Both the position numbers and the translations under genes were made by a program. Below, piece by piece: positions 26,703 to 64,000 of a stretch of 64,000 bases of DNA (positions are counted from its first letter, which is position 1; every line of letters begins with the position of its first letter). The notes under the pieces are model-generated. The model ran no database searches, was not told where the DNA came from, and saw nothing but the letters and a program-made list of their open reading frames with translations. The DNA lies in the sequence record MK250028.1, one strand, 5' to 3'.

Positions 26703-27959
26703 TTATTCATAAGAATTTTCATAATCTTTTAATTTTTCTTTCGCATATTCTATAGTTATATGAAATTCTTTTTCATTAGACGCCGGTAAATTATACATTG
26801 CATCATCCATAAGATTCTCTACTATTCCTCTTAACCCCCTAGCGCCTAATTTATTCTTAATGGATAACTTAACTATATAATCATAAACTTCATCATCTAT
26901 TATAAGTTCAATACCATCTAATTTAAACAACTTCTTAAATTGTTTAATAATAGCATTTTTCGGTTCTGTAAGAATTCTCTTCAAATCATCTTCAGTTAAA
27001 GGATTAAGATATGTAATAATAGGAAGTCTACCAATTAATTCAGGAATCAAACCATAATTCTTTAAATCTTCCGCATTTACATATTTAAATATGTTTTCTT
27101 TATTATCAGAAAAATATTTCTTATCCTTTGATACAAATCCTAATGTAGATTTATTAACTCGTCTCTCTATAATTTTATTCAAACCAACAAAAGCACCACC
27201 ACAAATAAATAAAATATTTTTTGTATCAACCTCTACCATTTTAGCATCCGGGTGTTTTCTTCCTCCCTTTGGAGGAACATTTACAACAGAACCTTCAATT
27301 ATTTTAAGTAATGCTTGTTGAACGCCTTCACCTGAAACATCTCTTGTTATAGATGGATTTCCTCCGGATTTCCTTGCAATCTTATCAATCTCATCAAGAA
27401 ATACTATTCCGTGTTCTGCTTTCTTAACATCATAATCACATGCTTGGAGAAGTCTTGTGATTGCAGTCTCAACATCATCACCAACGTATCCTGCTTCGGT
27501 GATAGAATTAGAATCCACTATACTAATTGGTACATCTAACATTTTAGCAATAGACTTAACCAAAAGTGTTTTACCAGTACCAGTGTCTCCCAAAAGTATA
27601 CAGTTACTCTTCTCAATCTCTACATCATCAAATCCTTTTTGTTTAATTCTCTTATAATGATTATAAACTGCAACTGCTAACCTTTGTTTCGCTTTATCCT
27701 GACCAATTACATATTGATCCAAAAATTCTTTAATCTCTGTAGGTTTTTTTACATCATCCTTATGAAAATTATCATCTGGTGGTAAAAACTGTGTATTATG
27801 ATTTACTATACTCAAATTCATATTGTAAATCTGGTCACAACATTCATTACAAATACTTCCATATTCACCATTAAAAAGTAATGCAACTTGGTCTTTCGTC
27901 TTACCACAAAATGAACACTTATTTTCTTTTTTATTTGTATCTTTCTTTTTTTCTGCCAT
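26703..27959 (-). CDS. clpX: ATP-dependent Clp protease ATP-binding subunit ClpX
   Basis: CSFCGK..C..C zinc domain, [18 protein letters not shown]...[17 protein letters not shown] docking loop, GARGL. Confidence 0.97.
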
Positions 27960-28678: not shown

Positions 28679-29812
28679 TTAATAATTTATTTGTTTTAAT
28701 CCTTCTGCTAAAATATTTAATGAAGCATTATAATCTCTATCAATCTCTTTACCACAATGTGGACATATCCATTCTCTCTAACTTAATTTTAAATCTTTAT
28801 AAATATGTCTACAATTATGGCAAGTTTTAGATGAAGGATAGAATCTATTTATTATAACCAGCTATTTTCCATACCATCTACATTTATATTCTAACTATTT
28901 TCTAAATTCAAATAAAGATAACTCTTGAATAGATTTAGCAAGTTTATGATTAGACATCATTCCATTTACATTTAAATCTTCAATACAGATAACTTGATTT
29001 TCATTAACTAGTTTTGAAGTGATTTGATGTAAATATGTATTTCTCTAATTTTTTATTTTCTCATGAACTTTTGCAATTTTAATTCTAACTTTATTCCGAT
29101 TATTACTTCCTTTCTATTTCTTACTTAACAACCTCTATAATTTCTTTAATTTCTTTTCTTGATTTCTATAGAAATGTTTATTTTCATATCTATTTCCATT
29201 AGAATCAACGATAAAATCTTTTATTCCTAAATCTAAACCTATTACGGTATCTAATTTTTCTTTTTGTATAATATTATAATATATTAAAATAAACAAATAA
29301 TATTTTTCTGTAGAAGTTTTAATAAGCGTAATTGAATGTATTTTATTTTGATTATGATTTAAATATATTTCATCTTTTTTAGAACATTTAAATAATATAT
29401 TCTTTAACTATTTAATTAATGTTATCCTATTACCATTAATTTTCTTCTTTTTAAATTTAAATATAGTTCTTGTAAATCTACAACTTTGCTTAATATCTTT
29501 CTTTGATTTGAATTTAGGATAACCATTATGTAATTTAAAGAAATTATCATATGCTTTAATTAAATCCTACATTGATTGCTATAAACACATAGCATATACA
29601 TCATTTAAAAAAGTATATTCATCTTGTTTTTTTAAATTAGTCAAATATTTACCTAATTGTGTCCATGATACAACTTGTTTATTCTACTCATACTATGACT
29701 TCTTATAATCCAATAATTTATTATATATAAGTCTACAACAACCTAACTGTTTAGAAATAAATTCTTTCTAAACATTATCAGGATATATTCGTATTTTAAT
29801 ATATTTTAACAT
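28679..29812 (-). mobile_element. tnpB: IS200/IS605-family TnpB RNA-guided nuclease (377 aa), no transposase
   Basis: KIRIYP..G..R..YN helix, YPKFKSK, RuvC GLDLG / IEDL / RDYNAS, zinc finger SSKTCHNC..WICPHCG; 12 in-frame TAG. Confidence 0.93.
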
Positions 29813-56078: not shown

Positions 56079-56969
56079 ATGGAAAAGTATAATGTATTCC
56101 TTGGAGGAACATGTGCGGAATCTACATGGAGAGATTAGTTAATGCCTATGTTGGATTAGTATAATATAACATATTTTAACCCTGTAGTTGATGATTGGAC
56201 AGAAGAATGTCAGGTAATCGAGAATTGGCATAAAGAGAACGATGATTATAATTTGTTTGTAATTACGAAAGAAATGCAAGGTTGTTTCTCTATTGCAGAA
56301 GTTGTTGATTTATCTAATAAGAAACCCGCATAGACTTTATTCTGCGTCTTATATGATGGAATGGAAAAGTTTATGGTTAAATCATGTAAAGCTACATCTG
56401 ATCTTGTTAAAAAGAATGGAGGAATTATATTAGATACATTGGAAGATATTGCAGATTATCTTAATGGAAAGATTAACCAAACAACAGATAATGATATGTT
56501 TGAATATACTAATATACAAGAGATTAAACCAGATTCCGAAGTTCAAGATATTAATGATGAATTTAATGATGTTCCAAAGATATTTCTTGCAGGAACAATA
56601 GATATGGGAAATTCGGTAGATTGGTAGAATTATCTTTGTAAATTCCTTGATGAACATAATAAGAGATGCGTGATATTTAATCCTCGAAGAAATGTTTGGC
56701 CTGATTATAAATCAGATGAATTCGAATATCAAGTTAATTGGGAATTAAATCATCTTGAAGAATCTGATATTATATTGATGAATATTTTAGGAACAAGTAA
56801 ATCTCCTATTACATTATTGGAGATGGGATTGTTTATGAAATCAGGGAAGTTGGTAGTTATATGTGAAAAAGATTTTTATAGATATGGTAATGTTGAAATA
56901 ACATGTCATAAATATAATGTTCCGTTATATAATAATTTAGAGGAATATCTAAATAATAATATAAATTAA
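56079..56969 (+). CDS. Tandem nucleoside 2-deoxyribosyltransferase-like domains (296 aa)
   Basis: VFLGGTC..WR..FNPVV.DW and IFLAGTID..W..FNPRR..WE..SPITLLEMGL, in one frame through TAG. Confidence 0.78.
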
Positions 56970-59820: not shown

Positions 59821-60737
59821 TGAATATAGATAAATTAAAAAAAGATATATCAATATCTATTAAAGATACATTAAAAAAATATAATTTTAATGATTCCAAA
59901 ATTAATGATATTTTGGAATCATTAAATTCATATATGGATGAAGGAATAGAGTTTGATGATGAAACACATATTGTTTCATTCAATCCAAATCATCAAGAAT
60001 ATGTAGATACAAATGATCCTTGGAACCCGAAACCTATATATAATGAAGTAGAAGGTTATAAGGTAATTTCGATATTTAAACGTAAAGAAACAGAAGATAG
60101 ATATGATGGTAATCCATTAATTTATGCATTAAAAGGTTTGCATGGATGGAAATTTTCAAATCCATCATATGATATATTTACTTTATTACGTAGATTCGTT
60201 GCAGTTACAAAAGAATTAAAAGAAAAGTTTGATGTAATTATTACTATACCTTCTTCAAATAAATTAAATACAGAAGTATTATATAGAGTTAAAAAACTTA
60301 TTACGTGCGAACATACATATACTGATTTTTTCCAGAAGCTTGATGCAAATGACGTATATGAAGGTTTTTTAAATACTGATTGGTTTGATACTCATTGTAA
60401 AAATAAAGAAGAGGAAGAAAAAATACATAAGTTAATATCAAGATCAATACGGCATATGAATTTACCAAAAAATAAAAATGGCAATGATGGAATATTTTCA
60501 TATAAATTTTTAGGTAAACCATTAAGGAATGCAATTATTCAATCTATGTATATTAATGATATATATAAAGATGAAATTACATATGGAAAATATCTTAATG
60601 ATAAGAAGATATTGGTTATAGATGATACAGTTACATCAGGTAAAACTATATCAGATTCTGCTGATGCTATATTGGAAACTTATGCACCAAAATCAATAAC
60701 ATTTTTAACTTTATTTTCTCCATTAACAAAAAATTAA
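59820..60737 (+). CDS. Phosphoribosyltransferase-fold protein
   Basis: C-terminal PRPP-binding loop ILVIDDTVTSGKT. Confidence 0.7.
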   Translation: MNIDKLKKDISISIKDTLKKYNFNDSKINDILESLNSYMDEGIEFDDETHIVSFNPNHQEYVDTNDPWNPKPIYNEVEGYKVISIFKRKETEDRYDGNPLIYALKGLHGWKFSNPSYDIFTLLRRFVAVTKELKEKFDVIITIPSSNKLNTEVLYRVKKLITCEHTYTDFFQKLDANDVYEGFLNTDWFDTHCKNKEEEEKIHKLISRSIRHMNLPKNKNGNDGIFSYKFLGKPLRNAIIQSMYINDIYKDEITYGKYLNDKKILVIDDTVTSGKTISDSADAILETYAPKSITFLTLFSPLTKN

Positions 60738-61053
60738 TATTTTTTTGAAAAAAAGTTTCAAAAATGAGAGACTTTTGAAAAAAATTTAGATATATATAAT
60801 AAAGAAATAATTTTTAAAAACAAAAAAACTATGAAGCAATTTAATAACATATATAAAAATAACGTTGATATTTATGCCGATTCATTTAATTGGTATGAAC
60901 AAGATTGTTATGCAGATATGTTACGAGATATTGTGATTAGTTAATACGTTTATAAATAAAGAAATAATAGTAAAACTATTAATATATTTTAAATCTTGAA
61001 ACATTCTGCAATAAACAGAGAGTTTCAAGATTTTTTTCATTTATTATAGAAAT

Positions 61054-61144
61054 ACACAGATGTGCGAGTGGTTGATGCAGTTGGTCTCCAAAACCAATAA
61101 CGGTATATATGTACTGTTCGAGGGTTCGAATCCTTCTCTGTGTG
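61054..61144 (+). tRNA. Type II (Ser-like, long variable arm) tRNA with anticodon CCA (Trp)
   Basis: 7-bp acceptor ACACAGA/TCTGTGT, TGC/GCA D-stem, TTGGT-CTCCAAA-ACCAA, 7-8-bp variable stem, TTCGAAT T-loop, G73. Confidence 0.85.
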
Positions 61145-61336
61145 CAAATTAAAAATTTATACAAATAAAATAAGAATAATATGACAAAGTTAATACGACA
61201 TATACATAAGCATCGAATACAGTTATAAATTGTTGATCTTATATTATACATTATTATATATAGGATTGACATAAGAAATCATGTTCCTATATGTTTAATG
61301 ATATATTGTTGTATTATATTTAGGAACACTCCATAG

Positions 61337-61411
61337 TGGGGTGTAACTCAACGGTCAGAGTGGTATTCTTATTAAGAATACTGGTAGTGGGTTCAACTCC
61401 CACCACCCCAA
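61337..61411 (+). tRNA. Atypical tRNA with anticodon arm 2 nt longer than standard (central ATT); identity unclear
   Basis: TGGGGTG/CACCCCA acceptor, ACTC/GAGT D-stem, GTATTCTTATTAAGAATAC arm, GTGGG-TTCAACT-CCCAC T-arm, A73. Confidence 0.75.
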
Positions 61412-61436
61412 CTAAAAAATAAATTAAATTAGAAAA

Positions 61437-61685
61437 ATGGAAAAGATTAATTTAAAATCTTTAGTTAAGGGTACAGCAGACATTGTTTGTGTAAATTCAG
61501 GTGGTATTGTTGTTTATAACATTACATCAGATGATAATCATATATATTAGATAGAAATAGATTTATCAGATAAACATGATGTAGGTGAAACAGCAGCATT
61601 CTTACCACATTATGATAGAGCACTTATTCTTATGAGATGGATTAGACGTTCTATAGATAATGATACTATAATAAAGATTAAATAA
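61437..61685 (+). CDS. Hypothetical phage protein (82 aa)
   Basis: ATG to TAA with one TAG; C-terminal LMRWIRR. Confidence 0.7.
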
Positions 61686-61737
61686 AAATATTTTTGATTT
61701 TTTATCAGACAAATTTTTTTATTTGAAATATATTATG

Positions 61738-61785
61738 TATCTTTGTATTGTTAATAAAATAACAAACAAAAATTGTTCTTTGAAA
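61738..61785 (+). promoter_or_regulatory. Promoter P1 (-7 TATCTTTG) + boxA-like TGTTCTTTGAAA
   Basis: TATCTTTG at 61738-45; TGTTCTTTGAAA at 61774-85. Confidence 0.6.
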
Positions 61786-61858
61786 TATTGATAACAAAAT
61801 AAGAAAATAATTTTTTGAAAATTTTTCTTAGAATATTTTTTAATTCAAAATAAAGATG

Positions 61859-61897
61859 TATCTTTGAATTGTAATTAAAAAATAAAGTTCTTTGAAA
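61859..61897 (+). promoter_or_regulatory. Promoter P2 (-7 TATCTTTG) + boxA-like GTTCTTTGAAA
   Basis: TATCTTTG at 61859-66; GTTCTTTGAAA at 61887-97. Confidence 0.6.
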
Positions 61898-61921
61898 TTT
61901 TGATAGACAAATATAGAAATT

Positions 61922-62282
61922 ATTCATATAATATATGTTATGTTTAATGTTACTGAGAAGTTAATCAGATATAATATTGAACTTCAAATTTAAAAGTAAC
62001 TTCATAAATAATTTCATTATTGTTTATGTGAGGAAACAAACATAACTATATGAATTTATAATAATGATGCTGCCAAAGAAAAATATGATTGAAAAATATC
62101 AGGCTCTATATAAGATTTCTTATATTAGACTGCTTGTCCAAAGTGCATCAGGAGATATATATAGAATATTAAAGTCCTTTTAATATTGCTATTGCTTTCA
62201 AAAAGATATATCTCCACGAGCTGAATAGAACAAATGAACGACTCAAGCTAATGTTTGGTTATATACATAAATCTTATAAGAA
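61922..62282 (+). ncRNA. Candidate multi-stem structured ncRNA (~360 nt), family unknown
   Basis: Many nested complementary pairs (listed in findings); no credible ORF. Confidence 0.5.
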
Positions 62283-62339
62283 TAAGAAGTGTCACTGTAA
62301 CGGTCGGATGTGTAGTTAACTGACTTTAAAGTTATATTT

Positions 62340-62410
62340 GGGTATTTAGCTGGAAGGTCAAGCATCTGACTGTTAATCAGAAGACGTGGGTTCGATTCCC
62401 TCAGTACCCG
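62340..62410 (+). tRNA. tRNA-Asn(GTT)
   Basis: GGGTATT/AGTACCC acceptor, TCTGA-CTGTTAA-TCAGA, G73. Confidence 0.9.
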
Positions 62411-62526
62411 CAAGTTAAAAACATAACATTTTATATATGAAGGCTCGTACCTTTCAAATTCAGATGATACCGTCAAGGCGGAGATATATAATGTTTCTGA
62501 ATATGTTTTTTGATGATTGATTAAAT

Positions 62527-62687
62527 AATAACGTAGTTTAACGGTAAATGAAGTCTTACGTTAAAGTAAGGGTTAAATAATTTAAGAAATAAAAACAGCG
62601 CTATTTCTTTTATTTCTTAAAAAGAAGGGTTCATCACTGCGTATTGCAACTATGAAGTAAGGGAAGTGCAACTCCACCCTGTTAGTT
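62527..62687 (+). ncRNA. Degenerate tRNA-like element with long insert
   Basis: AATAACG/TGTTAGT ends, D-arm TAGTTTAACGGTAAAT, weak T-arm around TGCAACT. Confidence 0.3.
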
Positions 62688-62760
62688 ATTTAATCTTATT
62701 TTTAATTTAAATTAAATTTTTATTATAGTATACCACTTGTGAAAGCAGTATACTAGATTT

Positions 62761-62833
62761 AGATGGTTAACTCAGTGGTTAGAGTTCTCGGCTTACATCC
62801 GAGCTGTCAGGAGTTCGAATCTCTTACCATCTA
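62761..62833 (+). tRNA. tRNA-Val(TAC)
   Basis: AGATGGT/ACCATCT acceptor, CTCGG-CTTACAT-CCGAG, A73. Confidence 0.93.
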
Positions 62834-62843
62834 CCTTTTGGGT

Positions 62844-63048
62844 TTGTCTTTCGTATAGACATGGTATTACTATGGTCCTAAAGAAAAGAGAAGTAACGAG
62901 GTATGAAAATGAAATATAGATAAGGGGAAAGGAGCATTAACTGCGAGTGCAGTGTGCAAAATGGAACTGGAGTGAAAGATGATTAGTGAAGCGAAAATTG
63001 AAGTATGTATTGTAAGGATAAAGGTGTGTTCGAATCCATCAAGACAAC
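62844..63048 (+). ncRNA. tRNA-like RNA with a 135-nt purine-rich insert replacing the anticodon loop
   Basis: TTGTCTT/AAGACAA 7-bp stem, GTA/TAC D-like stem with GG, GTCCT/AGGAT helix, TTCGAAT T-loop. Confidence 0.45.
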
Positions 63049-63120
63049 TAATAAAAATATTTATAATTTAAATAGACTTTTATATGTTTATTCAATATAA
63101 ATATTGAATCATAAAATATG

Positions 63121-63330
63121 AAGATATTTATGTTTTATATATTGAGTATTTATGAATTGAGTCGTTAGAAGAATTTAATTTATAAATTATGTATGTAAAA
63201 ATTAAATAAATTCATATTTTTAAAAAGATAAGATTTAGATAATTATTTTTCTATATAGTTAATATATAGTTTTTAAGGTTAACTTCATATATATTATAAA
63301 ATTTATATATGTTATTAAGTTAAATATCTA
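63121..63330 (+). repeat. ~210-bp dispersed non-coding repeat, copy B
   Basis: Reverse complement of 14610-14819; ends AGATATTTA / TAAATATCT form a 9-bp inverted repeat. Confidence 0.9.
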
Positions 63331-63387
63331 AATATTGTTTTTAACTCAAAAGAATTTTATAGGGTATTATCTAAATCTCTATAAATT

Positions 63388-63461
63388 GGGGGTATAGCTC
63401 AGTTGGCTAGAGCATCTGCTTTGCACGCAGAGGGTCATGGTTTCGAGTACCATTATCTCCA
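63388..63461 (+). tRNA. tRNA-Ala(TGC)
   Basis: GGGGGTA/TATCTCC acceptor with G3:U70, TCTGC-TTTGCAC-GCAGA, A73. Confidence 0.93.
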
Positions 63462-63683
63462 CGCTAGGTGTGAAACATTACAGTAATAAGGATTAAACTA
63501 TATTATTAGACAATATACTTAATTACTTATTAAATAAATGAATTAAAGTAAACATGTAGAATATATTATTAAGTCTAAATATAAAATATATTTGAAGGCG
63601 TATGTTAATTTCATTCTGGTTAGAACCTATTTTAAATCCTATAGGTGAACGGGCAGCGGTGAATGTTTCAGGTAAAATTTAAT

Positions 63684-63783
63684 GAAATATATTATCCCAC
63701 AGGGCAAGGGCGTGCTATTAAAATACCGTAAAGCCGGTAAGCTATAAGAGTATTAAAAGGTTCAATTCCTTTTGTATATTTCA
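63684..63783 (+). ncRNA. tRNA-like element with over-long acceptor/T stack
   Basis: GAAATATAT/GTATATTTC stem, CCC/GGG D-like stem, AAAAGG-TTCAATT-CCTTTT T-arm; no canonical anticodon arm. Confidence 0.35.
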
Positions 63784-63791
63784 TTAATTTT

Positions 63792-63874
63792 GGGTGAGTG
63801 TCCCGAGTGGCAAAGGGGGCTGACTGTAAATCAGCTGTCATTTGACTTCGTAGGTTCGAGTCCTACCTCACCCA
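63792..63874 (+). tRNA. tRNA-Tyr(GTA)
   Basis: GGGTGAG/CTCACCC acceptor, GCTGA-CTGTAAA-TCAGC, variable arm, A73. Confidence 0.95.
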
Positions 63875-63879
63875 CAAAT

Positions 63880-64000
63880 ATGTCAGAATTAAAAGAATAT
63901 ATATGTGAATCTTGTAATAAAAAGTTTTATTCTACTAAGACTTTTAGAAAAGATAGACATATAAAATGTGATGAATGCAAACAAAAACGTAAACATTCTA
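63880..64000 (+). CDS. Partial zinc-ribbon protein, possibly a homing endonuclease N-terminus
   Basis: MSELKEYICESCNKKF..IKCDECK; runs off the right edge. Confidence 0.5.
   Translation, partial: MSELKEYICESCNKKFYSTKTFRKDRHIKCDECKQKRKHS

What the first reader, a model, noticed from the sequence alone, without database searches (positions are those of the whole stretch)
61054..61144. Serine-type tRNA body carrying a tryptophan (CCA) anticodon
SEEN: a well-paired cloverleaf with a long variable arm (AACGGTA/TACTGTT plus a T-G pair), a Ser-style D-loop GAGTGGTTGAT, G73 and anticodon loop CT-CCA-AA. CCA is one base from Ser CGA. KNOWN: bacterial tRNA-Trp has a short variable loop; SerRS reads the long arm and ignores the anticodon, while TrpRS reads CCA and G73. 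INFERENCE: either a missense tRNA putting Ser at UGG (host sabotage or statistical recoding), or a Trp tRNA rebuilt on another scaffold to evade anticodon nucleases. Conserved Trp positions in this window still use TGG, so full reassignment is unlikely.
Basis: partly seen in the sequence, partly recalled or inferred. Interest (0 to 1): 0.75.

Follow-up and report, generated by a model that had tools for sequence, protein, structure and literature searches.

The report
Phage tryptophan tRNA with extra arm
A giant gut phage (Lak megaphage of Prevotella) carries a strictly conserved tRNA that reads the tryptophan codon but is built with the long extra arm normally found only in serine, leucine and tyrosine tRNAs. 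It most likely still carries tryptophan, and similarly shaped tRNAs turn out to be scattered through many other phages.

Summary
Window 61054-61144 (+) is a well-formed 91-nt tRNA with anticodon CCA (61088-61090), G73 and an 8-bp variable arm. The window is a Prevotella phage Lak-B megaphage. The gene is identical in Lak-A, -B and -C except at the tip of the extra arm, where the changes keep the pairing. It is already listed as "Trp CCA" in published Lak tables, but I found no discussion of its shape.

The "Ser at UGG" reading is not supported:
- TGG sits at invariant Trp positions of Lak proteins.
- The acceptor end (A1-U72, C2-G71), anticodon arm and T stem match the host tRNA-Trp.
- The acceptor end lacks the G1-C72/G2-C71 signature found in all six host Ser tRNAs.

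The D loop and the arm geometry do look Ser-like, so some SerRS cross-charging cannot be excluded.

New context: long-armed tRNA(CCA) genes occur in at least 81 distinct sequences (32 clusters) in IMG/VR and in cultured Caulobacter phages. Almost all have G73 and U72. None was found in 201 Bacteroidales genomes.

Best reading: a tryptophan tRNA on a class II scaffold. Why it has this scaffold is unknown.

The parts
61054..61144 (+). whole tRNA gene (positions 1-73), anticodon CCA, class II architecture; CCA end not encoded
   Evidence: ARAGORN; Rfam 48.6 bits; identical in Lak-A/B/C outside the arm tip
61054..61060 (+). acceptor stem 5' strand ACACAGA (A1, C2, A3...), pairing with 61137-61143
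   Evidence: A1-U72 and C2-G71 are shared with host tRNA-Trp
61063..61079 (+). D arm: stem TGCG/TGCA, 9-nt loop AGTGGTTGA
   Evidence: the loop differs by one base from host tRNA-Ser(UGA) L138
61081..61097 (+). anticodon arm TTGGT-CTCCAAA-ACCAA; anticodon CCA at 61088-61090
   Evidence: the loop and 4 of 5 stem pairs are identical to host tRNA-Trp
61099..61118 (+). long variable arm: 8-bp stem with 4-nt loop, no unpaired base 5' and one (C48, 61119) 3'
   Evidence: three natural variants keep the pairing, with two pairs changed on both sides
61120..61136 (+). T arm GAGGG-TTCGAAT-CCTTC
   Evidence: the stem, including its G.U pair, is identical to host tRNA-Trp
61137..61144 (+). acceptor 3' strand TCTGTGT and discriminator G73 (61144)

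Best explanation
This is the Lak megaphage's own, and only recognisable, UGG-decoding tRNA. It is a tryptophan tRNA built on a class II (long variable arm) scaffold.

Inferred mechanism: it is transcribed from the head of the phage tRNA array and receives its CCA end from a CCA-adding enzyme. The host Prevotella TrpRS then charges it with tryptophan, reading the CCA anticodon, G73 and the A1-U72 pair. C2-G71 and A1-U72 replace the G2-C71/G1-C72 signature of Ser tRNAs and so should keep SerRS off, despite the Ser-like arm.

Shown: the anatomy, the conservation, the pairing of the arm, the Trp meaning of TGG, the similarity to host Trp and Ser tRNAs, and the wide occurrence of such tRNAs in phages. 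Inferred: expression, charging, and the purpose of the arm.

My guess for the purpose is that the arm makes the phage tRNA-Trp structurally different from the host one. It would then escape something that acts on host tRNA-Trp, such as a defence nuclease or a phage-induced shut-off.
For: - It is a real tRNA.
- The 81 positions outside the arm tip show no change between Lak-A, -B and -C, while the flanks are about 85% identical. The arm tip varies but keeps its pairs.
- It is the only tRNA(CCA) among the tRNA genes of Lak-B1 in which an anticodon could be read.
- TGG means Trp. Codons 182, 207 and 221 of the nucleoside deoxyribosyltransferase-like protein align with W in 100, 80 and 100 of 100 non-Lak homologues. 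Between Lak-B and Lak-A, W is the most conserved residue (35 of 41) and there are no W/S exchanges.
- Host tRNA-Trp shares A1-U72, C2-G71, G73, the anticodon loop, 4 of 5 anticodon stem pairs and the whole T stem.
- All 6 host Ser tRNAs have G1-C72, G2-C71 and A3-U70.
- In 67 distinct long-armed phage tRNA(CCA), N73 is G in 66, position 72 is U in 59, and G1-C72 occurs in only 4. Of 53 co-resident Ser tRNAs, 49 have G1-C72 and 49 have G2-C71.
- Published identity rules name the anticodon, G73 and the first acceptor pair for bacterial Trp, and the arm plus acceptor-stem determinants for E. coli Ser (PMC9976931).
Against: - There is no expression or charging evidence; no RNA run holds the locus.
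- With the variable region removed, the tRNA is as similar to host tRNA-Ser(UGA) (71.4%) as to host tRNA-Trp (71.4%).
- The D loop, U8-G9, T loop and arm geometry (long stem, one unpaired 3' base) are Ser-like.
- Serine identity rests mainly on the arm, and G73 is shared.
- Whether a bacterial TrpRS tolerates an 8-bp extra arm is unknown.
- tRNAscan-SE in eukaryotic mode flagged the gene 'pseudo' at 29.1 bits; bacterial mode gave 56.95.
Confidence: 0.65

Rival explanations
1. Dual-identity or Ser-accepting tRNA. The Ser-like arm, D loop and G73 let the host SerRS charge a substantial share of it, so some UGG codons receive Ser. This would be statistical mistranslation or host sabotage.
For: The arm geometry and D loop match host Ser tRNAs. 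Similarity to host Ser(UGA) equals that to host Trp. Serine identity rests primarily on the arm and ignores the anticodon. Lak-B genomes carry no Ser tRNA of their own.
Against: A1-U72 and C2-G71 replace the Ser signature that is invariant in the host (6 of 6) and near-invariant in phages (49 of 53). The phage's own proteins need Trp at TGG, so the damage would fall on the phage too. Most members of the wider class have short Tyr-type arms (3-4 bp, three unpaired 3' bases), which on published conversion work (my recollection) SerRS should not accept. The class as a whole is therefore not about Ser.
Confidence: 0.17
2. A neutral relic. An ordinary tRNA-Trp picked up a hairpin in its variable loop, or a class II tRNA was remoulded to Trp, and the arm has no function of its own.
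For: Other long-armed tRNAs for class I amino acids occur in Lak: Cys(GCA) in B1 and Arg(TCT) in C1. They also occur in other phages. Some members, such as L220, have a fully canonical Trp body plus a hairpin.
Against: The proximal 5 bp of the arm are invariant and the tip changes are compensatory. The D loop has the class II form, so the body is adapted to the arm. The shape recurs in 32 sequence clusters. It was not found in 201 Bacteroidales genomes. Together these point to selection in phages.
Confidence: 0.13
3. Not a translational tRNA: a tRNA-like element with another role (decoy, primer, regulator), or a pseudogene.
For: The 'pseudo' flag in eukaryotic-mode tRNAscan. No expression data.
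Against: All universal tRNA positions are present: U8, A14, G18G19, A21, U33, A37, TTCGAAT and the G15/C48 pair. All helices are perfect. The gene is strictly conserved and heads a tRNA array.
Confidence: 0.05

Closest known systems
Bacterial tRNA-Trp(CCA), here the host-type Prevotella/Segatella copy (L139 1772-1845)
   Same: CCA anticodon, loop CTCCAAA, G73, A1-U72, C2-G71, T stem GAGGG/CCTTC.
   Different: The host copy is class I: 74 nt, a 5-nt variable loop and an 8-nt D loop. The Lak copy has a 22-nt variable region with an 8-bp helix, a 9-nt D loop, and U8-G9 instead of U8-A9.
Bacterial tRNA-Ser (class II, SerRS substrate)
   Same: Long helical arm flanked by one unpaired 3' base, G73, U8-G9, A3-U70, T loop TTCGAAT; the D loop differs by one base from host Ser(UGA).
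   Different: The first two acceptor pairs (A-U, C-G instead of G-C, G-C) and the anticodon. The arm is 8 bp, against 5-6 bp in the host.
allo-tRNAs (Ser-accepting tRNAs with non-Ser anticodons; Mukai et al. 2017, from memory; cited in PMC7590224)
   Same: A long arm combined with an anticodon for another amino acid.
   Different: allo-tRNAs have 8/4 or 9/3 acceptor/T branches. This tRNA is a canonical 7/5.
Phage tRNAs that escape tRNA-directed defences (eLife 2023, PMC10264068; Nat Commun 2024, PMC11555353)
   Same: A phage copy of a host tRNA that differs structurally from the host copy.
   Different: The described escapes rely on anticodon-loop changes or on supplying extra tRNA. Here the anticodon loop is identical to the host's and the change is an added arm. 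No nuclease target is known here.
Type I and type II tRNA-Leu in Streptomyces coelicolor (PMC6614811)
   Same: One amino acid served by tRNAs of both classes, charged by one synthetase.
   Different: The opposite direction: there a class II family gained a class I member, and it happened in a cell, not a phage.
tRNA-Trp of Caulobacter phages CcrColossus and CcrPW (JX100810 59240-59325)
   Same: 86-nt tRNA(CCA) with a long variable region, annotated simply 'tRNA-Trp' (the same sequence is L196).
   Different: A Tyr-type arm (3 bp, three unpaired 3' bases), an encoded CCA end, and an unrelated sequence.

Membership tests
tRNA (Rfam RF00005) | Cloverleaf scoring above the curated threshold, with the universal nucleotides | tested here: met
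   48.6 bits against 29; ARAGORN structure
tRNA (Rfam RF00005) | Expressed, processed and aminoacylated | not testable with these tools
   No RNA run holds the locus
bacterial tRNA-Trp | Anticodon C34 C35 A36 | tested here: met
   61088-61090; invariant in all Lak copies
bacterial tRNA-Trp | Discriminator G73 | tested here: met
   G at 61144; identity rule from PMC9976931
bacterial tRNA-Trp | First acceptor pair as in the host tRNA-Trp (A1-U72) | tested here: met
   A1-U72 and C2-G71 occur in both
bacterial tRNA-Trp | Class I body (4-5-nt variable loop) | tested here: not met
   22-nt variable region with an 8-bp helix. Host and sampled Bacteroidota copies are class I
bacterial tRNA-Trp | Charged by TrpRS; inserts Trp at UGG | not testable with these tools
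   Indirect only: TGG means Trp in Lak proteins
bacterial tRNA-Ser | Long helical variable arm of Ser geometry, plus G73 | tested here: met
   8 bp and one unpaired 3' base, like host Ser(GGA) and Ser(CGA)
bacterial tRNA-Ser | Acceptor signature G1-C72, G2-C71, A3-U70 | tested here: not met
   This tRNA has A-U, C-G, A-U. The signature is present in 6 of 6 host Ser tRNAs and about 49 of 53 phage Ser tRNAs
bacterial tRNA-Ser | Class II D arm | tested here: inconclusive
   The D loop differs by one base from host Ser(UGA), which also has a 4-bp D stem. Other host Ser tRNAs have 3-bp D stems
allo-tRNA | 8/4 or 9/3 acceptor/T branch (from memory) | tested here: not met
   7/5
tRNA-Sec | UCA anticodon, 8/5 branch, 6-bp D stem (from memory) | tested here: not met
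   CCA, 7/5, 4-bp D stem
long-armed phage tRNA(CCA) group (defined here) | CCA anticodon, variable region of 13 nt or more, G73, U72 | tested here: met
   Lak copies are one of the 32 clusters (L197).

The most novel reading that the evidence does not exclude
The class II scaffold is a recurrent, selected phage device. Giving tRNA-Trp (and, in some phages, Cys, His, Lys and other tRNAs) a long arm makes the phage copy structurally distinct from the host copy. It would then survive a host tRNA-directed defence or a phage-driven destruction of host tRNA. Phages that carry a class I and a class II tRNA(CCA) side by side would be hedging between the two states.
Probability: 0.3. Interest if true: 0.85.

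Novelty: new variant of a known kind. Interest (0 to 1): 0.6.

Why it matters
Textbook tRNA biology reserves the long variable arm for Leu, Ser, Tyr (in bacteria) and Sec. Here a tryptophan-decoding tRNA with that arm is strictly conserved in a whole clade of gut megaphages. The same combination is found in dozens of unrelated phage lineages, including cultured ones, but not in the host order sampled. I found no paper describing it in the library searched.

If these tRNAs are charged with Trp, TrpRS tolerates a class II body. That would make them natural material for orthogonal tRNA design. It would also point to a selective pressure on phage tRNA shape that has not been described, and it adds a testable case to the current work on tRNA-directed phage defence. 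If they are partly serylated, it would be a natural case of programmed mistranslation.

Tried and rejected
- ClpX homologue (26703-27959) as a Trp test: it contains no Trp.
- Recent remoulding from a neighbouring tRNA: the best co-resident matches are only 60-70% identical and of mixed isotypes, which is uninformative.
- Lak-C1 Arg(TCT) 89 nt as a clean 'hairpin insertion' example: it is not an orthologue of the 74-nt genes, so I dropped that argument.
- A phage-encoded TrpRS/TyrRS (PF00579) or a class IIa synthetase core such as SerRS (PF00587): none in Lak-B1, -A1 or -C1.
- RNA evidence: no RNA run holds the locus.
- BLAST of two representatives against named phages at E<=1e-8: no hits. Hits appeared only at E<=0.01.
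- Literature searches for long-armed tRNA-Trp in phages and three reviews or papers read: nothing found. This library lacks most subscription journals.
- Sequencing error at 61089: rejected.
- The arm as a spliced intron: rejected on general knowledge, since no known bacterial mechanism removes a 20-nt variable-loop hairpin. It is also a conserved helix.
- tRNA-Sec or allo-tRNA membership: rejected on the 7/5 branch.

Full report
**What the window is.** Window 60000-64000 is 100% identical to Prevotella phage Lak-B1/B9 (MK250020.1 121980-125980) and 99.3-100% identical to the other Lak-B genomes. About half of it aligns at about 85% identity to Lak-A and Lak-C. Lak megaphages (about 540-550 kb, about 26% GC) read TAG as Gln and carry 30-35 tRNA genes (Devoto 2019, PMC6784885; Crisci 2021, PMC8346664).

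**The observation.**
- ARAGORN finds tRNA-Trp(cca) at 61054-61145, at the head of a tRNA array. Rfam's tRNA model scores 48.6 bits, E=2e-8.
- The drawn structure has a 7-bp Watson-Crick acceptor stem, U8-G9 and a 4-bp D stem (one G.U) with the loop AGTGGTTGA.
- It has a 5-bp anticodon stem (plus G26.U44) and the loop CTCCAAA.
- The variable arm is 8 bp (two G.U, loop ATAT) and starts directly after position 44. One unpaired base (C48) follows it.
- The T arm is canonical (GAGGG-TTCGAAT-CCTTC). G73 is at 61144, and the next bases are CAAA, so the CCA end is not encoded.
- The unconstrained minimum-free-energy fold reproduces the acceptor, anticodon, T and long-arm helices. The D arm folds differently in the MFE and is only partly formed in the centroid (z=-2.05).

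**Not an error, and under selection.**
- All 15 GenBank Lak genomes hold the gene.
- Lak-A1, -A2 and -C1 are identical to the window at every position except the distal variable arm.
- A third arm variant occurs in metagenome contigs L416 and L417.
- On the three variants, all 30 pairs stay paired, and two pairs of the arm change on both sides (U-A to A-U, A-U to U-G). With only three sequences the shuffle control is weak, at 83 of 500.
- The remaining 81 positions are invariant although the flanks are about 15% diverged.
- Contigs of two other public runs differ from the window just outside the gene (61051, 61151, 61164, 61179) but show no listed difference inside it. Some difference rows were not displayed.
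- The gene is already tabulated as 'Trp CCA': score 56.95 in Devoto Table S2B, and 29.1 with a 'pseudo' flag in eukaryotic mode in Crisci Table S5, 44 entries. Neither main text mentions Trp or its shape, and the one supplementary use of 'variable' is unrelated.

**Does TGG still mean Trp?** Yes.
- In the nucleoside deoxyribosyltransferase-like protein (56079-56969, code 15; Pfam E=1e-41), the three TGG codons in the conserved domain align with W in 100, 80 and 100 of 100 non-Lak homologues. Invariant Ser columns use TCN or AGT.
- Between the window's ORFs and Lak-A1 (4505 aligned residues, 65% identity), W is the most conserved residue (35 of 41). It never exchanges with S, and S is conserved at only 56%.
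- TGG makes up 0.73% of codons.

**Whose tRNA does it resemble?** I fetched all 69 tRNAs of Segatella copri G8, plus the tRNA-Trp of three other Prevotella-group genomes.
- Host tRNA-Trp is class I (74 nt). It shares with the Lak gene A1-U72, C2-G71, G73, the whole anticodon loop, 4 of 5 anticodon-stem pairs, and the entire T stem including its G.U pair.
- Host Ser tRNAs share U8-G9, the T loop, A3-U70, the arm geometry and, for Ser(UGA), a D loop that differs by one base.
- With the variable region removed, identity is 71.4% to both Ser(UGA) and Trp.
- The molecule therefore looks like a mosaic. The parts that TrpRS reads are Trp-like: the anticodon, G73 and the first pair (PMC9976931). The parts that shape a class II core are Ser-like.
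- All six host Ser tRNAs have G1-C72 and G2-C71. The Lak tRNA has neither.
- No TrpRS/TyrRS or class IIa synthetase core is encoded by Lak-B1, -A1 or -C1, so host enzymes must do the charging.
- It is the only CCA anticodon among the Lak-B1 tRNA genes in which an anticodon could be read. Two tRNA-like genes with large insertions in the anticodon arm remain unassigned; they lack the CTCCAAA motif.

**A wider class.**
- ARAGORN finds 111 long tRNA(CCA) genes of 83-93 nt in those loci. They make 81 distinct sequences in 32 clusters at 80% identity. Many lie on contigs above 100 kb.
- Some are canonical Trp bodies with an added hairpin, such as L220. Most have class II D arms and a Tyr-type arm (3-4 bp, three unpaired 3' bases). 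A minority, including Lak, have Ser-type arms.
- Of 67 with a standard acceptor stem, 66 have G73, 59 have U72 (A-U in 41, G.U in 18) and only 4 have G1-C72. Co-resident Ser tRNAs have G1-C72 in 49 of 53 and G2-C71 in 49 of 53. Co-resident Tyr and Leu tRNAs all have A73. As a class they carry the Trp acceptor signature.
- In a sample not selected for length (118 stretches), 111 are class I and 5 have gaps of 17 nt or more. The long form is therefore a minority of a few per cent.
- In 401 Bacteroidota genomes, the 150 listed matches are all class I.
- In 201 Bacteroidales genomes, a looser long-only pattern gave nine hits. The six I fetched contain no tRNA, and the other three look like chance matches.
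- Cultured phages have the long form too. Caulobacter phages CcrColossus and CcrPW carry an 86-nt version annotated simply 'tRNA-Trp'.
- Long arms also occur on other class I isotypes in these contigs: Cys, His, Lys, Asn, Arg, Ile and Met. They occur as well in E. coli phage EcS1 (Cys) and in Lak itself (Cys in B1, Arg in C1).
- Several contigs carry a class I and a class II tRNA(CCA) a few bases apart: L421, L426 and L428.

**Interpretation.** The most economical reading is a tryptophan tRNA on a class II scaffold, charged by host TrpRS and protected from SerRS by its acceptor end. I put this at 0.65. Because the Lak arm is of the Ser type, and serine identity rests mainly on the arm, partial serylation cannot be excluded (0.17). 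A neutral relic (0.13) and a non-translational role (0.05) are less likely, given the conservation and the recurrence in phages. The purpose of the arm is not shown. Escape from something that acts on host tRNA-Trp is a reasonable guess in the light of recent work on tRNA-directed defence (PMC10264068, PMC11555353, PMC13096335, PMC13273310), but nothing here tests it.

**Novelty.** The gene is catalogued, but its architecture is not discussed. Six full-text searches found no description of long-armed tRNA-Trp in phages. The library misses most subscription journals, so earlier mention cannot be ruled out. I class it as a new variant of a known kind.

Noticed in passing
window 61337-61412 (+): The next tRNA has anticodon ATT by ARAGORN. 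Its orthologue in Lak-A and Lak-C is Ile(TAT). The Lak-B copy has a 2-nt insertion in the anticodon loop region plus compensatory stem changes (GAATT/AATTC to GTATT/AATAC). Devoto's table lists AAT in B2 and B4. An A34 anticodon on an Ile-type body is odd, and may be a better mistranslation or recoding candidate than the Trp gene.
   Followed up: partly
window 60991-61037 (+): A 12-bp hairpin (AAATCTTGAAAC / GTTTCAAGATTT, 19-nt loop) followed by a T run lies 16 nt upstream of the tRNA. It looks like a terminator for the upstream genes. Its 3' part is conserved in Lak-A and Lak-C. The consensus scan missed it because of the loop size.
   Followed up: no
L007 2354-2437 (Lak-B1 422353-422436); L004 23402-23490 (Lak-C1): Other Lak tRNAs for class I amino acids also have extra arms: Cys(GCA) of 84 nt in B1 and Arg(TCT) of 89 nt in C1. 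The latter is not an orthologue of the 74-75-nt Arg(TCT) genes.
   Followed up: partly
L007 3029-3143 and 3151-3277 (Lak-B1 about 423028-423276): Two tRNA-like genes (36 and 29.9 bits) carry 40-55 extra nucleotides inside the anticodon arm, and no anticodon can be assigned. They are listed as 'Undet' in the Lak papers.
   Followed up: partly
L421 2920-3082; L426 1194-1360; L428 4185-4345 (metagenome contigs): A class I and a long-armed tRNA(CCA) sit 5-9 nt apart in the same phage-like contigs. This suggests the two forms are not redundant.
   Followed up: no
L432 294-380 (Escherichia phage EcS1, LC371242 72541-72624): A cultured T4-like coliphage has a tRNA-Cys(GCA) of about 84-87 nt with a long variable region and a class II type D arm. 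It would be a convenient laboratory model for long-armed class I isotypes.
   Followed up: no
window 28679-29812 (-): A TnpB/IS605 OrfB-like ORF (Pfam OrfB_IS605 1e-25, Cas12f1-like TNB 3e-25) contains 12 in-frame TAG codons. It is therefore readable only in the phage's code.
   Followed up: no
window 26703-27959 (-): A full-length ClpX homologue (E=1e-124 to solved ClpX) with no Trp and no TAG codon.
   Followed up: no
window 61712-61769: In the read laying, many unrelated high-depth contigs from several runs match only this AT-rich stretch of about 50 nt, with joints and loose ends. It is probably a short repeat or low-complexity element shared with other genomes.
   Followed up: no
L002 24856-24946 (Lak-A1), L004 25950-26040 (Lak-C1): The Lak-A and Lak-C tRNA-Ser(TGA) appears to have U73 rather than G73. 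11 of 53 phage Ser tRNAs in the IMG/VR sample also have U73. Lak-B genomes lack this Ser gene.
   Followed up: no
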